From positions 124,001-188,000 of IMG/VR virus record IMGVR_UViG_3300028045_000001: DNA of 64,000 bases; one strand, 5' to 3'. The notes under the pieces are model-generated. The model had not been told where the DNA came from. It made no database searches and worked only from the letters and a program-made list of their open reading frames with translations. Shown here piece by piece: positions 19,398 through 64,000 of this stretch (position 1 is its first letter; the number at the start of each line of letters is the position of its first letter). A program made the position numbers and the translations under genes.

Positions 19398-20507
19398 ATG
19401 AAAATATTACACATTAGTGACATACATATGGGACATCCCAGGGTCCATGCGTCCATCACTTACAATAGCTTAAGGACGCATGTGTACCCATTGTTGAGTG
19501 ATGTCGATGTTTTAATTATAGGAGGGGATACTGCGGACAGGGGATTGGCATTGGATTCCTCTCCTAGTAGGATCATAGTGCAATTTTTAATGGACTTGTG
19601 CGATCTAATTAAAAAATACAACTTCCTTCTTAGGATCGTACGGGGCACGTGGAGCCATGATCGCGACTCCGTAAGAATTATAAATACTATAGCTAAGTCT
19701 AAGCGAGTTTCCAATAAGGTTAAATACTTTGACACTATTGAAATAGAATATATAAAAAAATTCAATAGATCCTTTATGTATGTCCCAGACGATGTGCCAT
19801 TTGATGATCTTGAACATAGGATTATAAACAAAATAAAAGATACTAAGACAGGTAAAGTAGATGTGATGGTGTTCCATGGCGCGATGAAGCATGCGTTGCC
19901 ATATATGCCAAAAGTGCCAGTCAATACAGTTAATGCAGACAATTGGAATGGCTATATAAATGAGGTGTGCTGCTGTGGCCATATACATCAAAGAAGTGTT
20001 TATAAAAATAAATTTATTTTTTCAGGATCGTTTGATCGATCGTGTCACGGAGATGAGGGGGCCAAAGGTTGCTTTCTAATAGACTTAAAGGACGATGGTA
20101 CTCGTAGAATAAAATTTATAGAGAACCCAAGCGCTGTTATTTTTAAGACACTTGACTTTAACAATATAAGTATGTCCGATGGTATCGATCTTATAGCAGA
20201 AACAATAGCCAAATGTAGCGAAGATAGATTGGATGTCGATATCCCCACGTATATCCGCATTCTTGTTAACGACATGATCACAAAAGCGGCCCTGTTGGGT
20301 CATACATCAAAGGCGTATGGAACGGTCAAAAATATCAAGATATCGTATAAGTCCGACAATGCCGATATAGTGGTCGATGTAGAGGAAGATGAAGAGGAAT
20401 CTGTATTTATCGTGACCCCTGATAACCTACCTCAAATAATAGCGGAACGTATCAATCAAAAACTATCTGTAGAAAGGATATCTGAAATATTGGATTGTAG
20501 TGGTTGA
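19398..20507 (+). CDS. sbcD: SbcD/Mre11-like metallophosphoesterase nuclease (phiKZ gp65-like)
   Basis: ISDIHMG, IGGDTAD, VRGTWSHD, FHG, CGHIHQ, SGSFDR motifs. Confidence 0.9.
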   Translation: MKILHISDIHMGHPRVHASITYNSLRTHVYPLLSDVDVLIIGGDTADRGLALDSSPSRIIVQFLMDLCDLIKKYNFLLRIVRGTWSHDRDSVRIINTIAKSKRVSNKVKYFDTIEIEYIKKFNRSFMYVPDDVPFDDLEHRIINKIKDTKTGKVDVMVFHGAMKHALPYMPKVPVNTVNADNWNGYINEVCCCGHIHQRSVYKNKFIFSGSFDRSCHGDEGAKGCFLIDLKDDGTRRIKFIENPSAVIFKTLDFNNISMSDGIDLIAETIAKCSEDRLDVDIPTYIRILVNDMITKAALLGHTSKAYGTVKNIKISYKSDNADIVVDVEEDEEESVFIVTPDNLPQIIAERINQKLSVERISEILDCSG

Positions 20508-20583
20508 TGTAAGAGCGAGTTCACATGGATAGGTGGGAGACCACCTATCCATGTGTAAGTTGGCCTAAGTCTATATATCGTGG

Positions 20584-20686
20584 TTCAATTAGTTTCACTT
20601 ATATATTACTATAACGAATAGGATAAGTTATATCGCCTGATTCATCGAAGTAGGTGCGACATTGGCTTGGCTTCAGTCGGCAAGAG
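20584..20686 (+). repeat. early promoter plus conserved 5' leader, copy 1 of 3
   Basis: 20592-20657 is identical over 66 nt to 47608-47673; near-identical core at 46956-47028. Confidence 0.9.
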
Positions 20687-20726
20687 CAGAAGTATTTTTA
20701 AAACATTTAAAATAAGAGGTGCACTC

Positions 20727-21041
20727 ATGAAAACTTTCTTTTTAGGACTTTGGAATGTCGTTAAAGGGTTTATTTTTGGTGTTGTACTGGCCATCCCAGT
20801 TGCAGTTGCCGTGTATGTTATACTCCACTATAGCTTAGTGTGGAAGATAACTGCTGCTGTTCTATGTGGGCTTTATATATTCGTTGGTTCACGTATATAT
20901 TATTCTGTACATGCTCCAAATGAAGATGTGAGTAAATTAAAATCGCATTTAGACACTTTGAGCAAAGGAATGAATAGAGTAGAAGATTTGTTGGCCAAAG
21001 GTAAATCTGACCTAGATAAGTTTAGATCCGCTAACGCTTAA
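20727..21041 (+). CDS. small membrane protein, paralog of 47749..48075
   Basis: AAGAGG RBS; MKTFFLGL...P.A.A.Y...WKITAAVL...Y matches MKNFFKGL...P...A.Y...WKIVAAVL...Y. Confidence 0.75.
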   Translation: MKTFFLGLWNVVKGFIFGVVLAIPVAVAVYVILHYSLVWKITAAVLCGLYIFVGSRIYYSVHAPNEDVSKLKSHLDTLSKGMNRVEDLLAKGKSDLDKFRSANA

Positions 21042-23250: not shown

Positions 23251-23467
23251 GTTACACTCCTCAATTAAAAAAGTTTTTGTTACGCCAACCAGACAGTGTC
23301 CCATACACATAAGCGGCCAGCCAATTAAAATATGATTTATAATATGGTTAAATGTATCAATTGTTTTTTTGTCTATCAGCACAATTTGTTTATATATAAC
23401 TGTATAGAATAGGAGAATCTCTACAATAAAAACAAACTATATAATTGTGAATAATATGGGGGCAGAG

Positions 23468-25127: not shown

Positions 25128-27377
25128 ATGAAAAAAGAAACTTCCCACTTTGTAACAAAGTGGGCAGGTAAACAGATCAAACTACCATTAGATCCAGATG
25201 GAGTGTATGACTTCACAGTAGATTGGGGAGATGGCGCGATTGACCAGATAGCTGTACACGATCAAAGTGAAACGATGCACACTTACAAAGACAAACAAAA
25301 GTCCCATACCGTAACTATATCTGGCACCATAGAAGGGTTTGGATTTTACAAGGATCTCGAAGCAATTAACGGAGGATTGCTCGATGTACTTCAATGGGGA
25401 AATGTTAAGTTACATAACAAGGGGTATCAGTTTGCAGAGTGTAAGAAATTAAAGGGGTTTAGTGCCAAAGATGTTCTATATTTATCTAACGTAACTCATA
25501 TGGGGTGTATGTTCTATGAAGCCATATCCTTCAATCAGGACTTATCCAATTGGGATGTAAGTAGTGTTATTGATATGAACGGCATGTTCTGCGGAGCTAT
25601 GTCATTCAATCAGGACATCTCCACATGGGATGTGAGTAATGTTACCCGTATGTATGGCGTGTTCTTTAAGGCCACTTCTTTCAACCAAGACCTATCCAAG
25701 TGGGATGTTAGTAGTGTTATTAATATGGATGGCATGTTCAGTAAGGCTACATCCTTCAACCAAAGCATATCCACATGGGATGTGAGTAATGTTACCCGTA
25801 TGTATGGCATGTTCTCCGAGGCCGCATCTTTTAATCAGGACATATCCAAATGGGATGTGGGTAGTGTTACTGATATGCACGATATGTTTCTCAAAGCTTC
25901 ATCCTTCAATCAAGACATTTCCACATGGGATGTGAGTAATGTTACCAATATGGGCGCTATGCTCTCTACCGCTACTTCCTTCGACCAGGACATATCTAAC
26001 TGGGACGTAAGTAATGTAACTGATATGGAGCTGATGTTGGCGGGAGCTACATCCTTCAATCAAGACATTTCCACATGGGATGTGAGTAATGTTACTAATA
26101 TGAGCTATATGTTCGCTAACGCTTCATCCTTCAACCAAGATATCTCCACATGGGATGTGGGTAAGGTTGGTAACATGAAACAGATGTTCTCGGGAGCTTT
26201 GGTATTTAATAAGAATATCTCAGACTGGAATATCGGCAACGTCACTGATATGGAAGGCATGTTCAATAAAGCTTCTTCTTTCAACCAAGATATCTCCAAC
26301 TGGGATGTGGGTAAGGTTGGTAACATGAAACGTATGTTCTCTGAAGCCAAAGCTTTTAATCGAAATATCTCAGACTGGAATACCGGCAATGTTGAAGATA
26401 TGGCAGGTATGTTCTGGAGAGCCTTAGCTTTTAACCAAGGCATACCTAACTGGGATGTAAGTAGTGTTACCGATATGGAGCAGATGTTTGCAGGTGCTTC
26501 ATCCTTCAATCAAGATATATCAAAGTGGGATGTCCGTAGTGTTATTAATATAGATGAGATGTTCCAGGAAGCTACCTGTTTCAACCAAGACATATCCAAA
26601 TGGGATGTTAGTAGTGTTACTGGTATGGAGCATATGTTCTATAATGCCGCATCATTCAACCAAGATATATCCAACTGGGACGTTAGTAATGTTACTACTA
26701 TGGCTGGCATGTTTACAGGTGCTTCATCCTTCAACCAAGATATATCTAAATGGGATGTGAGTAGTGTTACTAATATGAGGCTTATGTTCGGCGAGGCTAC
26801 ATCCTTCAACCAAGACTTATCTAATTGGGACGTTAGCAGTGTCACCGATACAGCTGGGATGTTTCTCAAAGCTTCCTCCTTCAACCAAGATATATCTAAA
26901 TGGGATGTGGGTAGTGTTACTAATATGGAACAGATGTTCTGTTACGCCATAGTCTTCAATCAAGACATATCCAACTGGGATGTGAGTAATGTTGCAAATA
27001 TGATGCATATGTTCACACATGCCATGTTCTTCAACCAAGATATATCCAAATGGGATGTAAGCAGTGTTACTAATATGAGAGGTGTGTTCATTGGTACTTT
27101 GTTCTTCGATCAAGATATCTCTAAATGGGATGTAAGCAGTGTTACTGATATGCAGGGTACGTTCTGGGAAGCTACATCGTTTAACCAAGATATATCCACA
27201 TGGGACGTAAGTAATGTAACTGATATGAAGAATATGTTCGCTAAAGCCACATCCTTCAATCAAGACTTATCTAACTGGAATGTCGACAGTGTTACTAATA
27301 TGAAGAGTATGTTCGCTGGAGCCACATCCTTCGATCAAGACATATCCAAATGGGACATCAGTAATGACGATCGATAA
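25128..27377 (+). CDS. DUF285/BspA-type repeat protein, 25 x 25-aa repeats
   Basis: N-terminal FVTKW..KLPL....YDFTVDWGDG domain, then FNQDISxWDVSxVTxMxxMFxxAxS repeats; AAGGAG RBS; early promoter at 25057; no signal peptide. Confidence 0.9.
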   Translation: MKKETSHFVTKWAGKQIKLPLDPDGVYDFTVDWGDGAIDQIAVHDQSETMHTYKDKQKSHTVTISGTIEGFGFYKDLEAINGGLLDVLQWGNVKLHNKGYQFAECKKLKGFSAKDVLYLSNVTHMGCMFYEAISFNQDLSNWDVSSVIDMNGMFCGAMSFNQDISTWDVSNVTRMYGVFFKATSFNQDLSKWDVSSVINMDGMFSKATSFNQSISTWDVSNVTRMYGMFSEAASFNQDISKWDVGSVTDMHDMFLKASSFNQDISTWDVSNVTNMGAMLSTATSFDQDISNWDVSNVTDMELMLAGATSFNQDISTWDVSNVTNMSYMFANASSFNQDISTWDVGKVGNMKQMFSGALVFNKNISDWNIGNVTDMEGMFNKASSFNQDISNWDVGKVGNMKRMFSEAKAFNRNISDWNTGNVEDMAGMFWRALAFNQGIPNWDVSSVTDMEQMFAGASSFNQDISKWDVRSVINIDEMFQEATCFNQDISKWDVSSVTGMEHMFYNAASFNQDISNWDVSNVTTMAGMFTGASSFNQDISKWDVSSVTNMRLMFGEATSFNQDLSNWDVSSVTDTAGMFLKASSFNQDISKWDVGSVTNMEQMFCYAIVFNQDISNWDVSNVANMMHMFTHAMFFNQDISKWDVSSVTNMRGVFIGTLFFDQDISKWDVSSVTDMQGTFWEATSFNQDISTWDVSNVTDMKNMFAKATSFNQDLSNWNVDSVTNMKSMFAGATSFDQDISKWDISNDDR
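25490..27362 (+). repeat. 75-bp coding tandem repeat array
   Basis: 25 countable F[ND]xx[IL]xxW units at a 75-nt period. Confidence 0.9.
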
Positions 27378-27459
27378 TTATCACTTATATATTACATACA
27401 TGAGTAGGCACTTGTTATTAATTTAATTGTATTAACTTTTAACTAATGGAGGATTAACC

Positions 27460-28696: not shown

Positions 28697-29848
28697 ATGG
28701 AATCTGGACAATTATTTGTAACCGAGTGGCGTGGACATATGATAGTGTTACCGTTGAGTAAAAATGGAACATATGATTTTGTAGTAGATTGGGGAGATGG
28801 TACAACTATAAGTATAACGGAGTATAATCAGTCAGAAATCACGCATGCCTATAAGGACTCAAAGTTATTTCACATAGTAACTATATCCGGAATTATAGAA
28901 GGGTTTGGATTTGGATTTAATGGGGGAATTGGACCACAAGAATGTGAGTTGGTGGACGTTATTCAGTGGGGAAATGTCAAATTGAATAACGATGGATATC
29001 AATTTAATAATTGTATTGGGTTAAAGGGATTTAGTGCTAAAGACAGTCTCGACCTATCTAACATTACCAATATGAGTTATATGTTCTATGGGTCTATATC
29101 ATTCAATCAAGATATTTCTAACTGGGATGTGAGCATGGTTACGAGAATGGATAGTATGTTCCACTACGCTGTCTCTTTCAACCAAGATATATCCAAGTGG
29201 GAAGTTGATAATGTCACTGACATGAGATGTATGTTCTACGAGGCCATAGCATTCAATCAAGATACCTCTATGTGGAATGTTAGTAGTGTTACCGATATGC
29301 AATATATGTTCTGTGAAGCTGCTGCCTTCAACCAAGATATATCAAAGTGGGATGTAAGTAAGGTGATTGATATGAATCATATGCTCAATGGCATTTTATC
29401 CTTCGACCAGGACATATCTGATTGGGACGTTAGTAGTGTGACTAATATGAGTTATATGTTCTCTGACACTCTACGCTTCAACCAAGACATCTCTAATTGG
29501 GATGTGAGTAATGTTACTAATATGATGGGCATGTTTGCTGGTGCGAGTTCTTACAACCAAGATATATCTAATTGGAATGTTAGTAATGTTGCTAATATGG
29601 GGTTTATGTTTTATGGAGCTTCGTCCTTCAACCAAGATATCTCCAAATGGAATGTAAGTAATGTTACCGATATGAGGCACATGTTCAATAATGCCACATC
29701 ATTCGATCAGGACATCTCCACATGGGATGTGAGTAAGGTTGCTGAAATGGAGCATATGTTTTATGGAATCGAATCACACAATATTCCAACATTAAAATGG
29801 AGTATCATTAAAGCTGATGCCAACACACGTCAATCGGAAAGAACATAG
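28697..29848 (+). CDS. second DUF285/BspA-type repeat protein (9-10 repeats)
   Basis: Same N-terminal FVTEW..LPL....YDFVVDWGDG domain and 25-aa repeats; early promoter at 28624. Confidence 0.9.
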   Translation: MESGQLFVTEWRGHMIVLPLSKNGTYDFVVDWGDGTTISITEYNQSEITHAYKDSKLFHIVTISGIIEGFGFGFNGGIGPQECELVDVIQWGNVKLNNDGYQFNNCIGLKGFSAKDSLDLSNITNMSYMFYGSISFNQDISNWDVSMVTRMDSMFHYAVSFNQDISKWEVDNVTDMRCMFYEAIAFNQDTSMWNVSSVTDMQYMFCEAAAFNQDISKWDVSKVIDMNHMLNGILSFDQDISDWDVSSVTNMSYMFSDTLRFNQDISNWDVSNVTNMMGMFAGASSYNQDISNWNVSNVANMGFMFYGASSFNQDISKWNVSNVTDMRHMFNNATSFDQDISTWDVSKVAEMEHMFYGIESHNIPTLKWSIIKADANTRQSERT

Positions 29849-32315: not shown

Positions 32316-32523
32316 TGACTAAGTACGACTTGCCTGGAGATGCTTCGACGAACGTTTTATGTGCTGTTTAAAAAACCATAACTACTGGGGGGCCTATCTT
32401 GGTTCCCAGTAGTTATGCGTCAATCCTATGCCAACAGCGACTTTCAATTTTTATTATTTATATATTGCTATAGCGAATAGGACAATTAAATTTATTTTTA
32501 TCTCACATAAAAAGGAGAGCATC

Positions 32524-34149: not shown

Positions 34150-34208
34150 GTTATTACAACACCATACTTGATGACCAAGTGTCATCAAGTATGGTATGAT
34201 CGGGCATA

Positions 34209-34304
34209 TTTTTTTTATACTCAGAGCGTCTTTCAATTTTTATTACTTATATATGGCATCAATGAATCACAAGATTAGAATACTAATATAAAAATATAAA
34301 GGAG
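34209..34304 (+). repeat. about 96-bp promoter/leader/RBS direct repeat, copy A
   Basis: Near-identical to 35196-35292; includes TTCAAT...TATATGGC-N4-ATG and ends in AAAGGAG. Confidence 0.85.
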
Positions 34305-34659: not shown

Positions 34660-34733
34660 CTTATGTGGGTCACAATGGTATAATTAGAAAGCACGTAAAT
34701 ACTAATACAAAAAATATAAAGGAGAAATTCATC

Positions 34734-35135: not shown

Positions 35136-35195
35136 TTAGTGATATGTAATAACACGTACACACTGTATCGACGATACAGTGTGTACGGTTCTATT

Positions 35196-35292
35196 TTTTT
35201 TTTATACTCAGAGTGTCTTTCAATTTTTATTACTTATATATGACATCAATGAATCACAAGATTAGAATACTAATACAAAAAATATAAAGGAG
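35196..35292 (+). repeat. about 96-bp promoter/leader/RBS direct repeat, copy B
   Basis: See copy A at 34209; the two downstream genes are unrelated. Confidence 0.85.
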
Positions 35293-35299
35293 AATTATC

Positions 35300-43949: not shown

Positions 43950-45020
43950 ATGAAAAAGAAAATAGATGACGCCGATGTCACCAGTTATATAGAGCATCTG
44001 GTCAGTATAAGTGGGGCAGCCAGTGTCAGCGAGGACTTCACCGTTTTAGATCACCACGGACAAGAAATGCTATTTGATAAGAAACCAGCAAAGATATTTA
44101 GTACTCAGTTAGTAGCTGGCGACTATCACTTATTAAATCCATTTAAAGAGACGGCCATAATCACAGCGCCTCAAAAGTGGCTAACCAATATGTTGACCTC
44201 TACGCTTGAGGAACACATCAAAGCCATTATCCTTGACGTCATTGCTACCATATCGGATACAGATGCAGAGGTGCCAACTGAAAAATTAAAATTGACTTCT
44301 AAATTCGTAAAGGATGTCACCAAGAATTCATTGGCCCAAGCTAAAAAGATTCTTGGGGTGAGGGGAGCCACAGTATCTGCGTACTTTGAAAATAAGGCAA
44401 AGACTGGCCAGCTCCAAACGAGATTGTTTGATGAGGGGTTCAGAGTAGAGTTTAGTAAAACCGTTTCAAATAAAAACTGGGAATTGGTCCAGGGTTTATT
44501 TTGTGAGATCGTTGGAACAAATGATTTCCACAAAGTGTACCAAGAAAAATCTACTGTAGTAGGCATGGCAAAATTTGAAACATTTATTAAGTTATTTGCA
44601 AGACTCATGGAAAGAATAGATCCATTTATAATTGAATGGATCGATACTAGCATGCAGCCAGCATTGCTAAATGAGATTTGTTCAAATCTGACACTTTGCC
44701 AAAAGCTGTCGGCATACATGGTCATACCGACGCCAAAGGATTCCAAAGAAAAGCCAAGTAATGCAGCTCCCTGGAATCGATTACCGGTCTCCAAACCATC
44801 ATCCGTTAGATCACTCATGGGGCGCACGACAATCCCTGCAGTAGCGACCCCAGCACCCAGGCCTACAATTGCTGTCGGTGGTAACACAACGCGTCAAGTC
44901 GCTACTGATCAACCAAAACTGATACTCAGTTCAGGTACAGGAGAGGCTCACCGTCCTATGCCTCCATTGCCACCGCATGTAAGGAAGAATATATCTGGGG
45001 TTACTAACATTCTAAGGTAG
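43950..45020 (+). CDS. hypothetical protein with Pro-rich C-terminal tail
   Basis: AAGGAG RBS before ATG 43950; followed by hairpin. Confidence 0.7.
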   Translation: MKKKIDDADVTSYIEHLVSISGAASVSEDFTVLDHHGQEMLFDKKPAKIFSTQLVAGDYHLLNPFKETAIITAPQKWLTNMLTSTLEEHIKAIILDVIATISDTDAEVPTEKLKLTSKFVKDVTKNSLAQAKKILGVRGATVSAYFENKAKTGQLQTRLFDEGFRVEFSKTVSNKNWELVQGLFCEIVGTNDFHKVYQEKSTVVGMAKFETFIKLFARLMERIDPFIIEWIDTSMQPALLNEICSNLTLCQKLSAYMVIPTPKDSKEKPSNAAPWNRLPVSKPSSVRSLMGRTTIPAVATPAPRPTIAVGGNTTRQVATDQPKLILSSGTGEAHRPMPPLPPHVRKNISGVTNILR

Positions 45021-45125
45021 CCCTATCCCACCATAGATGGTTGGTCATCTATGGTGGGGTATTTTTATAGACAGTAACATCTCATAGCCGTATATCGATT
45101 TTAAAGGGGGTCGTTCGATTAGCAA

Positions 45126-45800
45126 GTGAGCACACATTACTGCGGAGGTGGTATAATGCTAATACTTAAAGGTTGCAATTTAACAAATTTATTTAATACA
45201 ATGTTACACTGTAAGGTTATAACTACACAGTTAAACTCAGTGTGCCACACACCTAGACTTGCTGAACTATGGCAATCTACTGATCAGTGTAAGGCGATTA
45301 ATTCTGGTCACCATAGAAGGCGCTTTAGGGGGTGTATAGTTGGGTATAACTCTGTGGATCACGAGTATATATTTGTCAATATGTGGGATAACAATGGACA
45401 CCCAGTGGTAAGATATAATCTGATTGGGGCATCCAGTAACTGTAGTGAACTCATACCGTTAACTGATAAATTTATTGGGGCCATCATGCAATATGGTATA
45501 GGTACTTGCCCAGTAAAGACGTTGTTGTTTAAGACTGATAAGGGAGGATATTACATTAAAGAATTGAATGTTAAGCAGACCTTTCATAAGATCACTACAC
45601 ATAAAATCCTATACCCAAATACAAACAATCCATTGCGTCTACTTGATAATAAGTGGGCGGTTAAGAACACATCAAATCCAGATGTTAGACTTATTGTGTG
45701 CAAGGATTGGAAAGTCTTTTATGTAAGAAGAATGAATGGCGGGACATATAAGGTCTCATATAAATGTGTAGTTCAAAAGGAACGCAGTAGTCGTAGATAA
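45126..45800 (+). CDS. hypothetical protein
   Basis: 224-aa ORF; GGAGG suggests a start at the internal ATG near 45156. Confidence 0.6.
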   Translation: MSTHYCGGGIMLILKGCNLTNLFNTMLHCKVITTQLNSVCHTPRLAELWQSTDQCKAINSGHHRRRFRGCIVGYNSVDHEYIFVNMWDNNGHPVVRYNLIGASSNCSELIPLTDKFIGAIMQYGIGTCPVKTLLFKTDKGGYYIKELNVKQTFHKITTHKILYPNTNNPLRLLDNKWAVKNTSNPDVRLIVCKDWKVFYVRRMNGGTYKVSYKCVVQKERSSRR

Positions 45801-45883
45801 TGTAGTTGACCAAGATACCAAGTTTAAAGATTGCGGATTTAAATTATTTTTTTTTCTGCAGCGTGTACCGAAGGAGATCGTAT

Positions 45884-46111
45884 ATGAAAAATATTACTTA
45901 CATTCCAAAAGAAGATACAAGTGATAGTGGAGAAATAGACCCAATGGATTTAATGTCTCCACATAGTAATCATAATGTGGATAGTATAAAAAAAATAATC
46001 CGTGACACTGAGATATGTCCAAATTGTGGAGGAGTGGTTCGAGATAAAAATATCGCTGCTAACAATAGAGATGCCGTCAAGGCTGAGTGGGGAGGATGTC
46101 CAAACTATTAA
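45884..46111 (+). CDS. small Zn-ribbon-like protein
   Basis: AAGGAG RBS; CPNCGG...GGCPNY. Confidence 0.55.
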   Translation: MKNITYIPKEDTSDSGEIDPMDLMSPHSNHNVDSIKKIIRDTEICPNCGGVVRDKNIAANNRDAVKAEWGGCPNY

Positions 46112-46184
46112 TCGCCTGTCAATTATTTTGATTTATATATTACTTTTATGAAGACTAAAACTATTCTTTTAATAAAGGGAGAAA

Positions 46185-46391
46185 ATGTATATTTTGGATA
46201 ATTTAAAACGAAACTATTTGATATGTATCGTTCTTGTCGCAATAACAATTGTAGGTGTCTTTGCATTGGTTGGATTTGTACCTGGACTGTTGGTTTCAAT
46301 ACTCTCAGGAGCGGTAACGCTGGTGATATACGCGCTCTCACAGATGCACTCTATCAACAAGCGGCTGTTAAGCGGTGCCGCAGAAGATTAA
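46185..46391 (+). CDS. small membrane protein
   Basis: Own early promoter (46119-46143); two hydrophobic segments; hairpin terminator after. Confidence 0.7.
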   Translation: MYILDNLKRNYLICIVLVAITIVGVFALVGFVPGLLVSILSGAVTLVIYALSQMHSINKRLLSGAAED

Positions 46392-46602
46392 GGGAAGCAT
46401 ATTGGTAATCCATAACTCATACTACTCTGCTCACATGCAGAGTAGTATGTAGTTGCGGTATCCACTGTTTATCAATACGTTTCAGTTATATATTACTATT
46501 ATGTAATATCGGGTACTGATCTTCTTAACGTTTGCTTTAACAAGAAACCTAAGGTAGATCTTATTTTTTGTTTGTTTTAATAAATTAGGAGAAAATTTAA
46601 AT

Positions 46603-46881
46603 ATGCTTACGAGAGTAGTTAACTTTTATTTGAGGGCATTTACTTTTTATGCTGCAGGACCAGAGAAACTATTTGAATCGATAAGGCGTTGGTGTCGGTC
46701 AGAACACTGGTCATATAAATTCGTAGGATTAGGACAGATGGTCTCTATGGCCTTCACAATTATCATGCTCATTTCAAATGTTATACAGCCAACATTAAAT
46801 AGTGTTTTATTCATGTTCTTTTACATAATAATTTACTATAGTTATCTGTTTTTTCTTATTGAACAATACCAACAAACGTAG
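46603..46881 (+). CDS. small membrane protein
   Basis: Own early promoter (46472-46496); AGGAG RBS; hydrophobic C-terminal half. Confidence 0.7.
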   Translation: MLTRVVNFYLRAFTFYAAGPEKLFESIRRWCRSEHWSYKFVGLGQMVSMAFTIIMLISNVIQPTLNSVLFMFFYIIIYYSYLFFLIEQYQQT

Positions 46882-46955
46882 CATGTAAATAATAGGGGTA
46901 GCTCATTTGAGCTACCCCTATTTACTTGCCTATTTTATTTTTTAACCTAATGCGT

Positions 46956-47044
46956 TTCAATTAGTTTCACTTATATATTACTAAAACGAATAGGATAAGT
47001 TATATCGCCTGATTCATCGAGTGGGTGCACGACTGACTTGACTT
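46956..47044 (+). repeat. early promoter plus conserved 5' leader, copy 2 of 3
   Basis: TTCAATTAGTTTCACTTATATATTACTAAAACGAATAGGATAAGTTATATCGCCTGATTCATCGAGTGGGTGC. Confidence 0.85.
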
Positions 47045-47105
47045 ATTGTAAATAAACCCAAAACTTTAAATTTACCTTATATCTACATAATGGGAGGAAC
47101 TAATT

Positions 47106-47516
47106 ATGTTTGATAAAATAAAAGAATTATTAAGAACGATTTATAAGTACGTGGTTATTTTGCCATCTACAATTGCGTTTTTGATGATTAAGTCGTGCGC
47201 ACAAGCAACCATTCTATTTATGAATACTCTATATGGGTTCATTACGTCTACACGTATATCAGAACAGTTCGTTGGTGGCTTTCATGGCATTTCTATGGTC
47301 ACCATGATTGTTGGAGTAGGCATATGGACAATTACTGGCACATTACCGCCGCTGGCACTGGGTCTTATAATTGGCTACGTTCAAGTGATCGTTGTTTATG
47401 CGATATTAATTTACGCTGTCCCGGCATTGAGGCGAATGTATTACTATAGAGGTAGGTCAGCTACTAACAAAGCCAAACCGGCTGCTAACCGAACAACGCC
47501 AGCATTTGCATACTAA
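47106..47516 (+). CDS. membrane protein
   Basis: GGAGG RBS; several hydrophobic segments; SEQFVGGFHGISMVTMIV resembles SYKFVGLGQMVSMAFTII of 46603..46881. Confidence 0.75.
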   Translation: MFDKIKELLRTIYKYVVILPSTIAFLMIKSCAQATILFMNTLYGFITSTRISEQFVGGFHGISMVTMIVGVGIWTITGTLPPLALGLIIGYVQVIVVYAILIYAVPALRRMYYYRGRSATNKAKPAANRTTPAFAY

Positions 47517-47525
47517 ATGCCACAT

Positions 47526-47561
47526 CACCAGCTATCTTGTACATGTACAAGATAGCTGGTG
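47526..47561. terminator. perfect 36-bp palindrome
   Basis: CACCAGCTATCTTGTACA|TGTACAAGATAGCTGGTG followed by a T-rich tract. Confidence 0.7.
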
Positions 47562-47599
47562 GGCATATTTAGTTTTTTTTATTCTTAACCAGGTTGTCG

Positions 47600-47702
47600 T
47601 TCGAACTGTTTCACTTATATATTACTATAACGAATAGGATAAGTTATATCGCCTGATTCATCGAAGTAGGTGCAGTATTGACTTGGCTTCAGTCGACAAG
47701 AG
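47600..47702 (+). repeat. early promoter plus conserved 5' leader, copy 3 of 3
   Basis: 66 nt identical to copy 1; the 3' part ATTGACTTGGCTTCAGTCGACAAGAG is also conserved. Confidence 0.9.
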
Positions 47703-47748
47703 TGGAATTATGTTTAAACAAAATATTTACAGAGAGAGAGGTGAGCCA

Positions 47749-48075
47749 ATGAAAAACTTTTTTAAAGGACTTTTGAAATACCTAAAAAGTTTACTTGGAA
47801 GCACTCTATTTTTCGCGCCGCTTGTATGTGCTACATATGCAGTAGTTATTTGTGAGCCAACCTGGAAAATAGTTGCTGCCGTATTAGCCGTCGCCTACGT
47901 CATGTCTGTTGCCTATCTTTGGCAAATGGATGTAGTAGGAGATAGCGTCATTGTATCCGCTCCAGATTATGTTGAAGACGACATGGCCGATGACAAATAC
48001 CCAATCAATAAGTCAGCCAAGTCACCTAAGACTAAAAAATCAGGAACTAAAACAAATAGTAAGGCTACTAAGTAA
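47749..48075 (+). CDS. small membrane protein, paralog of 20727..21041
   Basis: GAGGTG RBS before ATG 47749; basic C-terminal tail. Confidence 0.75.
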   Translation: MKNFFKGLLKYLKSLLGSTLFFAPLVCATYAVVICEPTWKIVAAVLAVAYVMSVAYLWQMDVVGDSVIVSAPDYVEDDMADDKYPINKSAKSPKTKKSGTKTNSKATK

Positions 48076-48157
48076 CCTTACTAAAAAATAGTTATTCGGC
48101 CGACGGGGTATTAACCTATCTCCGTCGGCCGCGTCACTTACGAAGGGGGGACTTTAA

Positions 48158-48274
48158 ATGGAAAATATATTATACCATTTAGAAGAGATGGCCAAGTTGA
48201 TGACACATGTGGCTAAAGAAGCAGTAGCTATCATAGTCGCATTTAATTGGCATCAACATTAACCGGTGCGTAGG
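48158..48274 (+). CDS. putative 38-aa peptide
   Basis: AAGGGGGG upstream of ATG; MENILYHLEEMAKLMTHVAKEAVAIIVAFNWASTLTGA. Confidence 0.35.
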
Positions 48275-48343
48275 ACTATTCTTTTGTTGAATGTTTGATT
48301 TTTGGTAACAGCTCTGTAGATACAAAATGAGAGGAGGTATATC

Positions 48344-48778
48344 ATGAGATATACTAAATCATCAAATGCTTCTGGTAAGGGTTTCTTTAGTAAAATAAAG
48401 GGTTTCTTTAGTGGTATATGGGAAATCATTTTCGTTAAACCAAAGAACTTTATCGTAGGTAACATAATGAAAGTTTATAACAAACTGCCAAAAATGATTA
48501 GGTTCATTATTTCATACCCAATCATTGTAACAATAGTGTATGTTCGCTCTATCTTGTTTGTAATGTCGGCAATCATGAAGAAATTGATGTCGAAGAAATT
48601 AGTTGAGACAATGGAAGGGCTACTATACGCAGTTGGACTTGGCGCAGTTGGTTATCTATTTGTTATGGTGCCAATGGAACTTATACATTTTGCGATTGTA
48701 TATGCTGTCTATATGACAATATACTTATATTTACAGTATGCGTATTCAATTACTACTATTCCAAAAAGTTATTTTTGA
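48344..48778 (+). CDS. membrane protein
   Basis: AGGAGG RBS; amphipathic N-terminus (GFFSKIKGFFSGIWE) and three hydrophobic segments. Confidence 0.75.
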   Translation: MRYTKSSNASGKGFFSKIKGFFSGIWEIIFVKPKNFIVGNIMKVYNKLPKMIRFIISYPIIVTIVYVRSILFVMSAIMKKLMSKKLVETMEGLLYAVGLGAVGYLFVMVPMELIHFAIVYAVYMTIYLYLQYAYSITTIPKSYF

Positions 48779-48866
48779 TCCATACCTACTTAATATTGTT
48801 TCCTGGTGAGTTTGACACAGCCTCACATTGTTAGTGTCAAACTCACTGAAGTAATTTTCAACAAAA

Positions 48867-49169
48867 GTGAGGAGTGTTATAATGTTTCCAAATTTATATT
48901 ATTGTCAAAGCATGAAAATATATGTTGAGGTTAATTCAGACTTTAGTAAAAACAAACATATAGATAACACTAGTTTATTTGTTACTGTGTTTCATTCTGA
49001 TAACGATGGTGTATGGTGGATACATCCGAAAATAATGGGGAAATCAATTGTACCTGTTGGTGGATCAAAAGTTGAATGTACTTGGCCAGAGCTTGTATCT
49101 AAGGTGTTAAGCAACAAAGCTGTATTCCACGAATCATGCAAAGGACTACGATATGTACAAAATTCATAA
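48867..49169 (+). CDS. hypothetical protein
   Basis: GAGGAG suggests a start at MFPNLYY; hairpin terminator follows. Confidence 0.55.
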   Translation: MRSVIMFPNLYYCQSMKIYVEVNSDFSKNKHIDNTSLFVTVFHSDNDGVWWIHPKIMGKSIVPVGGSKVECTWPELVSKVLSNKAVFHESCKGLRYVQNS

Positions 49170-49289
49170 CGTGGTAACTATGGGACTCTCTTGTTGAAAG
49201 AGAGTCCCTGTTATTTTTTTTTTACTTTCTTATGCCCTATTCTATAACTATTTAACTAATTGGATCCGATGAAAGGAGTATAGTGAAAA

Positions 49290-50447
49290 ATGAAATCATT
49301 CAAAATGATGATCGGCACTGTTATAGAGGTCATTGATATAAGTGAACCATACGCTACTAAAATTAAGGCGTATGTGTCAGAAATATTGCCAATGAACACG
49401 AATTCCGATACAGAACCAGCAGAGTACAAATTTTCAATAAAAAATGAAAATGGAGAAAAGGAAGAAGTTATAATTAAGAATAAGGGCTACGTCGTATGTG
49501 ACTATTTCAATCAAATCTCTAACAGGCCACATCCTCCGGTTGTTCATCCATCTGAGGAGGTGTACGTATTTCAAATAGGCGACCCAGATGTCTGGTGGTG
49601 GATGCCAATAAACAGAAAACATAACGCACGCTCAACTGAACACTTGAAGATAGTTATAGCTGACCGACCTATGGACCAAGTTGGAGAACCTCTAACTGAT
49701 GATAATACATGGTTTTTTGAAGTGGATACCCGCAATAAAAAACTTATCCATATTCATACGAGTGTCAGCGATGAGGAGTTAGTTGGATATGATATAACGA
49801 TAAATCCAAGCGATGGAGTGCTATCAATAACCGATACCAAACAGAACAGCTTAATATGGGAAAGTGCCACTCCGAGGATATATATCAAAAACAATAAGGG
49901 GTCCATTGTAGATATCAATAAAGAGCACATCATTATTGATGCCCCAAAAGATATATGGATGAAAGCCGGGAGACAAATGGTCGTCGATACACCAGTGATC
50001 ACTTTTGATACCCCAACTGCCAAATTTAATTCTAAGAATTTTGGTGTCGATGCATCAACTCTATTTAGCGTAGTTTCCCCATCTGTTGGCGTAGATGGAC
50101 CACTTATGGCGAGTGGACCAGTCATGACCGGAGCTATGTTTATGGGCATGGGTATAACCCCAGGTACAGGTCCAACCCTCCCTCCAGTTAAGACATCTCC
50201 AGGCAACTCCCCGGAAGATAACAAAGGTGGGGAGGACGAAACCTCTGCTCCCCCACCTACCCCGACCCCATCCCTTGCAAATAGATTCGCAGCTGACTGG
50301 GCCAATATGAAAGCTGCTATCGATATGATAGCTATATACTGTGCTGGAATAACAATTGACCCAGCTTCATTTGGAGGGCTTTCAGCAGTCCAGAAGCTCA
50401 CCTCGGCCGGTAAATTACCGAACATAACTGATGAACTATCGGAGTAA
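49290..50447 (+). CDS. baseplate central spike protein (phiKZ gp164 / gp5-VgrG-like)
   Basis: N-terminal OB-like region with SNRPHPPVVHPSEEVYVFQIGDPDVWWW, then short-strand beta-helix repeats (FFEVDT..K.IHIHTS..D....YDITINP.DG.LSITD). Confidence 0.65.
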   Translation: MKSFKMMIGTVIEVIDISEPYATKIKAYVSEILPMNTNSDTEPAEYKFSIKNENGEKEEVIIKNKGYVVCDYFNQISNRPHPPVVHPSEEVYVFQIGDPDVWWWMPINRKHNARSTEHLKIVIADRPMDQVGEPLTDDNTWFFEVDTRNKKLIHIHTSVSDEELVGYDITINPSDGVLSITDTKQNSLIWESATPRIYIKNNKGSIVDINKEHIIIDAPKDIWMKAGRQMVVDTPVITFDTPTAKFNSKNFGVDASTLFSVVSPSVGVDGPLMASGPVMTGAMFMGMGITPGTGPTLPPVKTSPGNSPEDNKGGEDETSAPPPTPTPSLANRFAADWANMKAAIDMIAIYCAGITIDPASFGGLSAVQKLTSAGKLPNITDELSE

Positions 50448-63008: not shown

Positions 63009-63121
63009 AATAGATGGGGGCAAGTGCCAAGTTATTGATTAGCGCTTATTAGATCTTTTCATTTATATATTACTACTATGTGTAAGGTATATGTATGTAG
63101 TTTTTAATATAGGAGAATAAT

Positions 63122-63313
63122 ATGGAAATATGTCAAGTCGATGGATGTAATAGAAAACACTATGTCAAGGGCCATTGTGAAAAACACAATAAAGAAATGC
63201 AGATATGCGGCAGGATACTCCCAGTTATAAAGTGTAAGTTCGAAGGATGCGATGAAGAGCGTTTTAAGGAGGGGTACTGTCATGGATGCTACATGCGGAT
63301 GTATAAACCATGA
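63122..63313 (+). CDS. two-finger C-x4-C-x9-C-x2-H/C zinc-finger protein
   Basis: CQVDGCNRKHYVKGHCEKH and CKFEGCDEERFKEGYCHGC; AGGAG RBS; early promoter at 63066. Confidence 0.75.
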   Translation: MEICQVDGCNRKHYVKGHCEKHNKEMQICGRILPVIKCKFEGCDEERFKEGYCHGCYMRMYKP

Positions 63314-63338
63314 CAGAATAACATCATAGGAGAATAAT

Positions 63339-64000
63339 ATGAAAATATGTAAGGTTGATGGATGTGATAGAAAACACCATGCTAAAGGTTACTGTCACAA
63401 ACATTATCTACAAATACAAAAATATGGCAAGATCCTGCCAGATAGAGTTATAACTGTTGGATGTAAAGTCGATAGATGCGATGAAAAGCACCATGCTAAA
63501 GGATACTGTAGGAAACACTATCTACAAGTGCAACAACATGGCAAGACCATGTCTGATAGAGTTAAGCCAGTTGGATGTAAAGTCGATAGATGTGATGGAA
63601 AACGCTATGCTAAAGGGTATTGTAGTAGACACTATCGACAAGTGCATAAGCGTGACAAGATCCTGCCAGATAGAGTTAAGCCCGTTGGATGTAAAGTCGA
63701 TAGATGTGACGGAAAACACTATGCTAAAGGGTATTGTAGCAAACATTATCGCCGGATGAGAAGACATGGTAAGATTCTGCCAGATAGAGTCAAACCCGTT
63801 GGATGTACAGTCGATAGATGTAATGAAGAGCGTGTAGCTAAGGGGTATTGTCACAAACACTATCATCAGATGCAGAGGAAGGGCAAGCTCCTGCCAGATA
63901 GAGTTGTTGGATGTAAAGTTGATGGATGTAAGGGAAAACACTATGCTAAAGGCCACTGTAGGAAACATTATCTACAAATGCATAGGTACGGTAAGATCCT
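63339..64000 (+). CDS. tandem zinc-finger array protein, at least 6 x 38-aa repeats (3'-truncated by window; absent from the ORF track)
   Basis: AGGAG RBS, ATG 63339; reads MKICKVDGCDRKHHAKGYCHKHYLQIQKYGKILPDRVITVGCKVDRC... open to the window end; 114-nt period. Confidence 0.88.
   Translation, partial: MKICKVDGCDRKHHAKGYCHKHYLQIQKYGKILPDRVITVGCKVDRCDEKHHAKGYCRKHYLQVQQHGKTMSDRVKPVGCKVDRCDGKRYAKGYCSRHYRQVHKRDKILPDRVKPVGCKVDRCDGKHYAKGYCSKHYRRMRRHGKILPDRVKPVGCTVDRCNEERVAKGYCHKHYHQMQRKGKLLPDRVVGCKVDGCKGKHYAKGHCRKHYLQMHRYGKI

What the first reader, a model, noticed from the sequence alone, without database searches (positions are those of the whole stretch)
20584..20726. Conserved, probably structured ~115-nt 5' leader shared by three early membrane-protein genes (20584, 46956, 47600)
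Seen: after the early promoter, AACGAATAGGATAAGTTATATCGCCTGATTCATCGA(A)GT(A/G)GGTGC is conserved in three places, with 66 nt identical between copies 27 kb apart. Each copy is followed about 113-120 nt after the AYG by a small membrane-protein ATG, whereas most other early genes have leaders of about 45-65 nt. The RNA can form two mutually exclusive hairpins: GAAT-AGGATA/TATC-G-CCT-G-ATTC, or CGCCT..TTC-ATC-GAA..AGGTG. Copy-2 changes (AGGTG to GGGTG, GAAGT to GAGT) keep the second pairing. A further hairpin TTGRCT-TGGCTTC-AGTCG follows in copies 1 and 3. Inference: an undescribed cis-regulatory RNA (switch, protein-binding operator, or export/localisation tag) for the earliest membrane proteins.
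Basis: partly seen in the sequence, partly recalled or inferred. Interest (0 to 1): 0.78.

Follow-up and report, generated by a model that had tools for sequence, protein, structure and literature searches.

The report
Repeated early promoter-leader cassette in jumbo phage
Three small membrane-protein genes of an uncultured phiKZ-like giant phage share one nearly identical promoter plus about 60 nt of 5' leader; this is real, but it looks like a regulatory cassette copied and kept alike by recombination, not a demonstrably folded regulatory RNA.

Summary
A 36-mer occurs exactly three times (20613, 46985, 47629). Copies 1 and 3 are identical over 66 nt (20592-20657 = 47608-47673). Leaders are 113-120 nt, against about 35-65 nt for most other TATATATTAC promoters in the window.

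The inference of a structured riboregulator is not supported:
- Folding energies equal those of shuffled sequence (z between -1.3 and +1.1).
- A consensus fold of 19 pairs has no compensatory change.
- The module does not alter the predicted accessibility of the ribosome-binding site.
- There is no Rfam match and no antisense partner in the window.
- No homologue turned up in IMG/VR, JGI metagenomes, GTDB genomes or 1.6 Mb of related jumbo-phage loci.

A plain recent gene duplication does not fit either. The copy 1 and copy 3 proteins share only 32% identity over 41 residues, and the copy 2 protein is unrelated.

Each copy heads a single-gene ORFan unit (hairpin, promoter, leader, gene) in DNA that the nearest relatives lack. 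A second promoter-leader pair (34206/35193, 96% identical) precedes unrelated genes.

Best reading: a lineage-specific promoter-leader cassette spread and homogenised by recombination, analogous to T4 PeSLs. A sequence-specific RNA or protein-binding role stays possible but untested.

The parts
20522..20555 (+). Copy 1: 15-bp perfect hairpin after the SbcD-like gene (stop codon at 20507). Probably the end of the upstream transcription unit. Its sequence is not shared with the other copies.
   Evidence: Read directly. It is picked up only as a generic hairpin by Rfam miRNA models, far below threshold.
20584..20609 (+). Copy 1: phiKZ-type early promoter (TTCAAT, spacer, TATATATTAC).
   Evidence: The motif type matches phiKZ and 201phi2-1 early promoters (PMC8244752, PMC11512511). 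The same motif stands before the RNA polymerase beta gene in relatives L007 and L009.
20614..20673 (+). Copy 1: conserved 5' leader module of about 60 nt, starting at the inferred transcription start (A of ACG). It has a conserved 44 nt, a 5-nt linker of variable sequence and fixed length, and then the TGRCTTGRCTT motif.
20674..20726 (+). Copy 1: 3' part of the leader with the Shine-Dalgarno GAGGTG. It is 72-83% identical to copy 3 and unrelated to copy 2.
20727..21041 (+). Copy 1 gene: 104-aa ORFan with a hydrophobic N-terminal half. It is a weak paralogue of the copy 3 gene.
   Evidence: It has no homologue among 1.84 billion representative proteins.
46894..46919 (+). Copy 2: GC-rich hairpin followed by T-rich DNA. 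Likely terminator of the upstream unit.
   Evidence: Read directly.
46956..46981 (+). Copy 2: early promoter. Its upstream element is identical to that of copy 1.
46986..47044 (+). Copy 2: conserved leader module, with one deleted A and one A-to-G change relative to copies 1 and 3. Homology to the other copies ends here.
47106..47516 (+). Copy 2 gene: 136-aa ORFan with three hydrophobic segments, unrelated to the copy 1 and copy 3 proteins.
47526..47561 (+). Copy 3: perfect 36-nt palindrome followed by a T-run. Likely terminator of the copy 2 gene.
   Evidence: Read directly.
47600..47625 (+). Copy 3: early promoter. Its upstream element is TTCGAA in place of TTCAAT.
47630..47689 (+). Copy 3: conserved leader module.
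47749..48075 (+). Copy 3 gene: 108-aa ORFan with two hydrophobic segments. One gene caller starts it at 47710 instead.
34206..34294 (+). Second, independent promoter-plus-leader cassette, member A. It is 96% identical to member B, including about 40 nt upstream of the promoter.
35193..35281 (+). Second cassette, member B. The genes downstream of A and B show no detectable similarity.

Best explanation
The feature is a lineage-specific regulatory cassette: a phiKZ-type early promoter fused to the first 60 nt or so of a 5' untranslated leader. It is present three times in this 240-kb uncultured jumbo phage. Each copy heads a self-contained single-gene unit (upstream hairpin, promoter, leader, small ORFan membrane-protein gene, downstream hairpin), and each unit lies in DNA that the nearest relatives lack.

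The near-identity is best explained by copying of the cassette in front of genes and by gene conversion among the copies, that is, concerted evolution. Position-by-position selection on a folded RNA explains it less well. In effect the cassette gives the three genes the same early transcription signal and the same 5' mRNA end. It also provides direct repeats through which such genes can be gained, lost or swapped, as PeSL cassettes do in T4-like phages.

Shown here: the repeat, its boundaries, the divergence of what follows it, its absence elsewhere, and the lack of any structural signal. Inferred: that the promoter is early, that transcription starts at the A of ACG, and that recombination is what keeps the copies alike.
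For: - There are exactly three copies in the whole contig and in IMG/VR.
- The identity profile for copies 1 and 3 is a sharp island: 48% upstream, 100% over 66 nt, then 83%, 72%, and about 62% (gapped background) in the coding sequence. The proteins are only 32% identical over 41 residues.
- The identical block includes promoter-spacer positions that vary among the other promoters of the window. That fits recent homogenisation better than per-site constraint.
- The relationships are mosaic. Copies 1 and 2 share the upstream promoter element, while copies 1 and 3 share the downstream leader.
- Copy 2 carries the module in front of an unrelated gene.
- A second cassette pair, 34206/35193, is 96% identical, including untranscribed upstream DNA, and stands before unrelated proteins.
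- Copies 2 and 3 sit in a 4.3-kb block (45020-49290) of small ORFs. In relative L007 the two flanking orthologues lie about 77 nt apart.
- Copy 1 sits at a synteny break after the SbcD-like gene. In the relative with 52% identity, the next gene overlaps the SbcD stop codon.
- The copy 1 and copy 2 proteins, the two that were searched, are ORFans.
- No structural signal was found.
Against: - Downstream of the 66-nt block, identity does not fall smoothly. A 5-nt linker differs in all three copies but keeps its length, and it is followed by the motif TGRCTTGRCTT, conserved in all three, including copy 2. This pattern is what selection on two spaced elements would give.
- That motif is complementary to nt 7-17 of the leader, and copy 2's homology ends exactly at the end of this possible helix.
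- All three genes encode hydrophobic proteins, which hints at a shared functional reason.
- No variant genomes were available, so no recombination event was observed directly.
Confidence: 0.55

Rival explanations
1. The module is a selected, folded cis-regulatory RNA. In this fold an outer helix (nt 7-17 with TGRCTTGRCTT) encloses an inner hairpin in which CGCCUG pairs with an SD-like URGGUG. The element would act as a switch or stabiliser for early membrane-protein mRNAs.
For: - RNAalifold finds one nested fold of 19 pairs that all three copies can form.
- The three-way variable positions fall mostly in the 5-nt internal linker.
- The two substitutions inside helices are U-A to U-G and keep the pairing.
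- Copy 2's homology ends at the 3' end of the outer helix.
Against: - Folding energy is no better than that of shuffled sequence: z = +0.31, -1.26 and -0.55 for the module, and +1.06, -0.09 and -0.20 for the whole leaders.
- The minimum-energy fold of copy 2 is a different structure.
- There are 0 compensatory changes, and with three sequences the test has no statistical power.
- The predicted unpaired probability of the SD/AUG region is the same with the module, without it, or with it shuffled.
- There is no Rfam match.
- A covariance model built on the fold finds nothing in 1.69 Mb of related phage DNA.
Confidence: 0.15
2. The module is a sequence-specific binding site on RNA or on DNA just downstream of the start site. 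A phage protein would bind it (a translational repressor or early shut-off factor, an RNA-binding or export factor, or a transcription roadblock). A stable fold would not be needed.
For: - Conservation is strict over about 44 nt, followed by a spacer of fixed length and free sequence, then a second conserved motif made of two tandem TTGRC units. This is the layout of a two-part binding site.
- A site of this kind would explain the lack of thermodynamic signal.
- It would also explain co-regulation of three membrane-protein genes.
Against: - No candidate binding protein was identified.
- There is no conservation outside this genome.
- The same conservation pattern can arise from overlapping gene-conversion tracts.
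- Only three sites exist, and two of them belong to paralogous genes.
Confidence: 0.2
3. Part of the leader is translated. The SD-like RGGTG is followed 5-10 nt later by a TTG or CTG codon. This would give either an upstream ORF (17 codons in copy 1; 24 codons in copy 3, ending in ATGA over the main start codon) or a 20-22 residue N-terminal extension in frame with the main gene.
For: - An SD-like sequence and a start codon at suitable spacing occur in all three copies.
- The frame from the TTG at 20667 and at 47683 is open into the main ORF in copies 1 and 3.
- The net length difference between copies 1 and 3 is 6 nt.
- In copy 3 the stop codon of the upstream ORF overlaps the main ATG.
Against: - In copy 2 the equivalent frames stop after 2-5 codons.
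- Nearly all differences between copies 1 and 3 are non-synonymous in either frame, and the indels in the nucleotide alignment are 4+1+1 nt rather than whole codons.
- The strictly conserved 44 nt lie upstream of any such start codon and contain stop codons in all frames.
Confidence: 0.07

Closest known systems
PeSL (promoter-early stem-loop) mobile regulatory cassettes of T4-like phages (Arbiol et al. 2010, PMC2839356; Comeau et al. 2014, PMC4122927)
   Same: Both are short repeated intergenic cassettes that contain an early promoter. Both stand immediately upstream of ORFan genes in plastic (hyperplastic) genome regions. Direct repeats flank single genes here too: copies 2 and 3 bracket one gene 644 bp apart, the geometry that yields PeSL mini-circles. 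A hairpin precedes each promoter.
   Different: The promoter here is a phiKZ-type virion-RNA-polymerase motif, not a sigma-70 promoter. The repeated part extends about 60 nt into the transcript, whereas the hairpins are not conserved between copies. There are only three copies, not about 50. Recombination products were not observed.
phiKZ / 201phi2-1 early promoters and 5'UTR-derived small RNAs (Wicke et al. 2021, PMC8244752; PMC11512511)
   Same: The promoter has the same architecture: a TATATTAC -10-like box with T-rich -20 and -30 elements. Chimalliviruses are known to have regulatory 5' UTRs, some of which give short RNAs, and one of these is conserved among related phages.
   Different: Typical phiKZ 5' UTRs are 31-40 nt long. 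The described 5'UTR RNAs arise by premature termination, and no terminator is present in this leader. The described conserved example is orthologous across phages, whereas this one is paralogous within a single genome.
Translational operators of phage early mRNAs (for example T4 RegA and gene 32 operators; from general knowledge, not tested here)
   Same: Both are short conserved sequences in the 5' regions of several mRNAs that would allow joint post-transcriptional control without a strong fold.
   Different: Those operators overlap the ribosome-binding site. This module lies 50-110 nt upstream of it and is predicted not to interact with it.

Membership tests
PeSL-type mobile regulatory cassette | Repeated intergenic motif that contains a phage early promoter | tested here: met
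   There are three copies of promoter plus leader, and a second family with two copies.
PeSL-type mobile regulatory cassette | The promoter is a sigma-70 consensus promoter read by the host RNA polymerase | tested here: not met
   The motif is TATATATTAC with upstream TTCAAT. The sigma-70 scan finds no promoter in the modules and no excess over shuffles.
PeSL-type mobile regulatory cassette | A stem-loop terminator or attenuator forms part of the conserved motif | tested here: not met
   Strong hairpins precede each promoter (20522-20555, 46894-46919, 47526-47561), but their sequences and positions are not conserved between copies.
PeSL-type mobile regulatory cassette | Located in plastic regions, directly upstream of ORFans | tested here: met
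   Copies 2 and 3 lie in a 4.3-kb insert relative to L007 and L009. Copy 1 lies at a synteny break. The copy 1 and copy 2 proteins, the two that were searched, have no homologues.
PeSL-type mobile regulatory cassette | Recombination between copies produces insertions, deletions, replacements or mini-circles | not testable with these tools
   All other contigs of this phage are identical in the region. Only the mosaic similarity among the copies hints at exchange.
Structured cis-regulatory RNA (Rfam-type family, riboswitch or leader) | Match to a described RNA family | tested here: not met
   There are 0 hits at gathering thresholds over the window. Only irrelevant sub-threshold hits to the terminator hairpins appear.
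Structured cis-regulatory RNA (Rfam-type family, riboswitch or leader) | Fold more stable than that of shuffled sequence | tested here: not met
   z-scores lie between -1.26 and +1.06 in ten folds of the leaders and their parts.
Structured cis-regulatory RNA (Rfam-type family, riboswitch or leader) | Base-pair covariation among homologues | tested here: inconclusive
   Of 19 pairs, 0 are compensatory and 2 show one-sided changes. The shuffle controls equal the observed values, because three sequences give no power.
Structured cis-regulatory RNA (Rfam-type family, riboswitch or leader) | Conservation beyond one genome | tested here: not met
   Exact-word scans of IMG/VR, JGI metagenomes and GTDB genomes found only this phage. 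nhmmer and covariance model R1 found no credible hit in related loci.
phiKZ-type early (virion RNA polymerase) promoter | TATATTAC -10-like box with conserved T-rich -20 and -30 elements | tested here: met
   There are 19 perfect TATATATTAC matches, all on the + strand. With one mismatch allowed there are 35 matches against about 17 expected. The motif stands before the RNA polymerase beta gene in relatives with about 30% protein identity. Descriptions are in PMC8244752 and PMC11512511.
phiKZ-type early (virion RNA polymerase) promoter | Mapped transcription start and early timing | not testable with these tools
   The phage is uncultured and no transcriptome is available. The start at the A of ACG or ATG is inferred from the motif spacing.
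5'UTR-derived small RNA made by premature termination | Terminator inside the 5' UTR | tested here: not met
   No terminator-like site lies between the promoter and the start codon in any copy.

The most novel reading that the evidence does not exclude
The 60-nt module is a new phage-specific RNA element: a weakly folded two-tier stem-loop or a two-part protein-binding site at the very 5' end of a subset of early mRNAs. In a phiKZ-like phage it would mark transcripts for membrane proteins for a shared fate, such as timed translation, protection from decay, or routing after they leave the early infection compartment.
Probability: 0.12. Interest if true: 0.65.

Novelty: new variant of a known kind. 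Interest (0 to 1): 0.3.

Why it matters
If the cassette reading is right, giant phages with their own RNA polymerases shuffle and add ORFan genes by the same trick as T4-like phages. They would use repeated promoter cassettes as portable recombination handles, built around a quite different promoter type and extending into the transcript. That bears on how accessory genes are acquired in jumbo phages.

If the module instead has an RNA-level role, it would be a handle on post-transcriptional control of the earliest membrane proteins in a lineage whose early infection biology is poorly understood. Either way the element is confined to one uncultured phage, so its general importance is limited for now.

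Tried and rejected
- **Known RNA family:** rejected. Rfam gave nothing at gathering thresholds, and permissive searches hit only the terminator hairpins.
- **tRNA- or tmRNA-like element:** none in the window.
- **Antisense partner elsewhere in the window:** the best non-self duplex (-36.3) lies within the range of shuffled queries, -32 to -36.
- **Anti-SD-like CGCCU sequestering the real ribosome-binding site:** rejected on prediction. Accessibility is unchanged with the module, without it, or with it shuffled.
- **Internal sigma-70 promoter or terminator in the leader:** none.
- **Host-derived sequence:** the 26-mer has no match in 185,579 species genomes.
- **Close cultured relative:** no blastn match among 50,697 phage records.
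- **Strain variants, for micro-diversity:** contigs from three other samples are identical across the leaders. The only differences lie at 20427, 20450 and 51470.
- **Homologues of the downstream proteins, to fetch orthologous leaders:** none found. The 90% clusters hold only alternative start-site calls.
- **Related jumbo-phage loci fetched through the RNA polymerase beta and SbcD-like genes:** they share the promoter motif but not the leader. The one covariance-model hit, in L133 (rough E about 0.03), lies in AT-rich DNA with no TATATATTAC promoter upstream and was judged chance.
- **Leader peptide or N-terminal extension:** kept only as a low-probability rival.

Full report
**What the window is.** The window is identical to part of IMGVR_UViG_3300028045_000001 (JGI contig Ga0233414_10000002, 239,960 bp). 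It encodes split multisubunit RNA polymerase subunits, a family B DNA polymerase, an SbcD-like nuclease and a DNA ligase. Its RNA polymerase beta-type proteins are only 20-27% identical to those of phiKZ-like and other jumbo phages. The nearest metagenomic relatives reach 29-34%, and one fragment reaches 52% for the SbcD-like protein. There is no nucleotide match among 50,697 phage records. The phage is therefore a deep-branching, uncultured, phiKZ-like jumbo phage with no close sequenced relative.

**The promoter.** TATATATTAC occurs 19 times perfectly, always on the + strand. Allowing one mismatch gives 35 matches against about 17 expected. The perfect copies lie in intergenic DNA with a shared context: TTCAAT, a spacer, a T-rich stretch, TATATATTAC, four bases, then ATGA. 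This is the architecture reported for phiKZ and 201phi2-1 early promoters, with a -10-like box and T-rich -20 and -30 elements (PMC8244752, PMC11512511). The same motif precedes the orthologous RNA polymerase beta gene in relatives L007 and L009. Calling it an early virion-polymerase promoter that starts at the A of ATG or ACG is an inference by analogy. No transcriptome exists.

**The observation.**
- The 36-mer is present exactly three times.
- Copies 1 and 3 are identical over 66 nt, 20592-20657 = 47608-47673.
- Copy 2 matches with one spacer change, one deleted A and one A-to-G change. After a 5-nt stretch that differs in all three copies, it shares the motif TGRCTTGRCTT, and its homology ends there.
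- The leaders measure 113, 120 and 119 nt. About 16 of the 25 listed promoter-like sites have 37-67 nt between motif and start codon, and three other promoters also have long leaders.
- The downstream products are hydrophobic.

**Not a plain duplication.** The copy 1 and copy 3 proteins are weak paralogues, with 32% identity over 41 residues. The copy 2 protein is unrelated. Along the copy 1 versus copy 3 alignment, identity is 48% upstream, 100% in the 66-nt block, then 83%, then 72%, and about 62% in the coding sequence, which is the gapped-alignment background. If the 3' leader (53/69 identical) reflects weakly constrained divergence, 66 unchanged positions in a row would be extremely unlikely, on the order of 10^-8 by my arithmetic. 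The block was therefore either held by selection or recently re-homogenised.

**Tests of the structured-RNA idea.**
- Folding energies of whole leaders, of the 62-nt module and of sub-fragments are indistinguishable from dinucleotide shuffles, with z between -1.26 and +1.06.
- RNAalifold proposes one nested fold. An outer helix pairs nt 7-17 with TGRCTTGRCTT, and an inner hairpin pairs CGCCUG with URGGUG. All three copies can form it, but 0 of its 19 pairs show a compensatory change and 2 show a one-sided change. The shuffle controls equal the observed values because three sequences carry no power.
- The minimum-energy fold of copy 2 is a different structure.
- The module does not change the predicted accessibility of the real ribosome-binding site in any copy.
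- There is no antisense partner in the window, no Rfam family, and no terminator or sigma-70 promoter inside the leader.

**Search for homologues.**
- Exact-word scans with four different patterns found only this phage in IMG/VR.
- An 18-mer scan of JGI metagenomes returned 40 places. Only those from the source contig and its sister sample (L016, L020, L023) have matching flanks; the others show about 25% flank identity, which is chance.
- The GTDB species genomes have no match.
- The copy 1 and copy 2 proteins have no homologues.
- I fetched 22-kb loci around the RNA polymerase beta gene of the two nearest relatives, and 79 loci (1.56 Mb) around SbcD-like genes of related jumbo phages. Neither nhmmer nor a covariance model built on the consensus fold finds the leader there. 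The one marginal hit lies in AT-rich DNA with no promoter upstream and was judged chance.

**Context favours a cassette.**
- Each copy is a single-gene unit: a strong hairpin, the promoter, the leader, a small ORFan, then another hairpin.
- Copies 2 and 3 lie in a 4.3-kb block of eight small ORFs (45020-49290). The flanking genes are homologous to neighbours in L007 that lie about 77 nt apart.
- Copy 1 follows the SbcD-like gene at a point where the 52%-identity relative continues directly into a different, overlapping gene.
- The copies are mosaic. Copies 1 and 2 share the upstream promoter element, and copies 1 and 3 share the downstream leader.
- The window holds a second, unrelated case. 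Cassettes 34206-34294 and 35193-35281 are 96% identical, including DNA upstream of the promoter that would not be transcribed, yet they precede proteins with no similarity. A 29-nt piece of that leader recurs before a third gene.

Copying promoter-leader cassettes in front of unrelated genes is therefore a habit of this genome. The closest described phenomenon is the PeSL cassettes of T4-like phages (PMC2839356). This element is not a PeSL: the promoter type differs, and no stem-loop belongs to the conserved repeat.

**What remains in favour of function.** Three things go beyond what a single conversion tract predicts: the 5-nt linker of fixed length and free sequence, the return of conservation after it in all three copies, and the end of copy 2's homology at the end of the possible outer helix. 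They fit a two-part binding site or a weak helix. An SD-like RGGTG followed by a TTG or CTG codon is also conserved. It opens a short upstream ORF or an in-frame extension in copies 1 and 3 but not in copy 2, and it shows no coding signature. I keep these as rivals with modest probability.

**Verdict.** The repeat is real and non-random. Its interpretation as a structured riboregulator is unsupported, and at present it cannot be tested by comparison. The best-supported account is a lineage-specific early promoter-leader cassette, spread and homogenised by recombination in plastic regions. It is a new variant of a known kind. Interest is modest.

Noticed in passing
window 34206-34294, 35193-35281, 34698-34726 and 35266-35294: A second promoter-plus-leader cassette is duplicated at 96% identity in front of two unrelated genes. 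A 29-nt piece of its leader plus the Shine-Dalgarno sequence is repeated exactly before a third gene, inside an operon.
   Followed up: partly
window 32459-32490 and 23391-23420: Two other TATATAT-type promoters start their transcripts with the same CGAATAGGA or AGAATAGGA words as the three leaders, whereas most promoters have ATGAtGTAA. There may be two subclasses of early promoter or of initially transcribed sequence.
   Followed up: partly
window 45020-49290: This 4.3-kb block of eight small ORFs, at least five with hydrophobic segments, carries four TATATATTAC promoters. It is inserted between genes whose counterparts in relative L007 lie about 77 nt apart, inside what looks like a spike/baseplate gene block (the relatives have a PAAR protein and a DUF2345-like protein here).
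   Followed up: partly
window 25412-27401 (ORF 25128-27377) and 29024-29848 (ORF 28697-29848): Long arrays of 75-nt (25-residue) repeats carry the motif SFNQDIS-WDVS-V. From memory this resembles DUF285/BspA-type repeats; it was not tested against Pfam. The arrays lie in two paralogous proteins, each behind its own early-type promoter.
   Followed up: no
window 63109-64000: At least seven tandem 114-nt units encode a Cys/His-rich 38-residue repeat (GCKVDRCD-KHYAKGYC-KHY). The array runs off the end of the window and is probably an array of zinc-binding modules.
   Followed up: no
window 47662-47752: In copy 3 a 24-codon upstream frame starting at a TTG ends in TGA overlapping the main ATG (ATGA), a layout typical of translational coupling. 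In copy 1 the same frame stops 12 nt before the ATG, and in copy 2 it stops after 2 codons.
   Followed up: partly
L007 9940, L009 9941, L008 1495: The promoter word TATATATTAC is kept immediately upstream of the RNA polymerase beta gene in phages whose proteins are only about 30% identical to this one. The promoter specificity of this lineage is therefore very old.
   Followed up: partly
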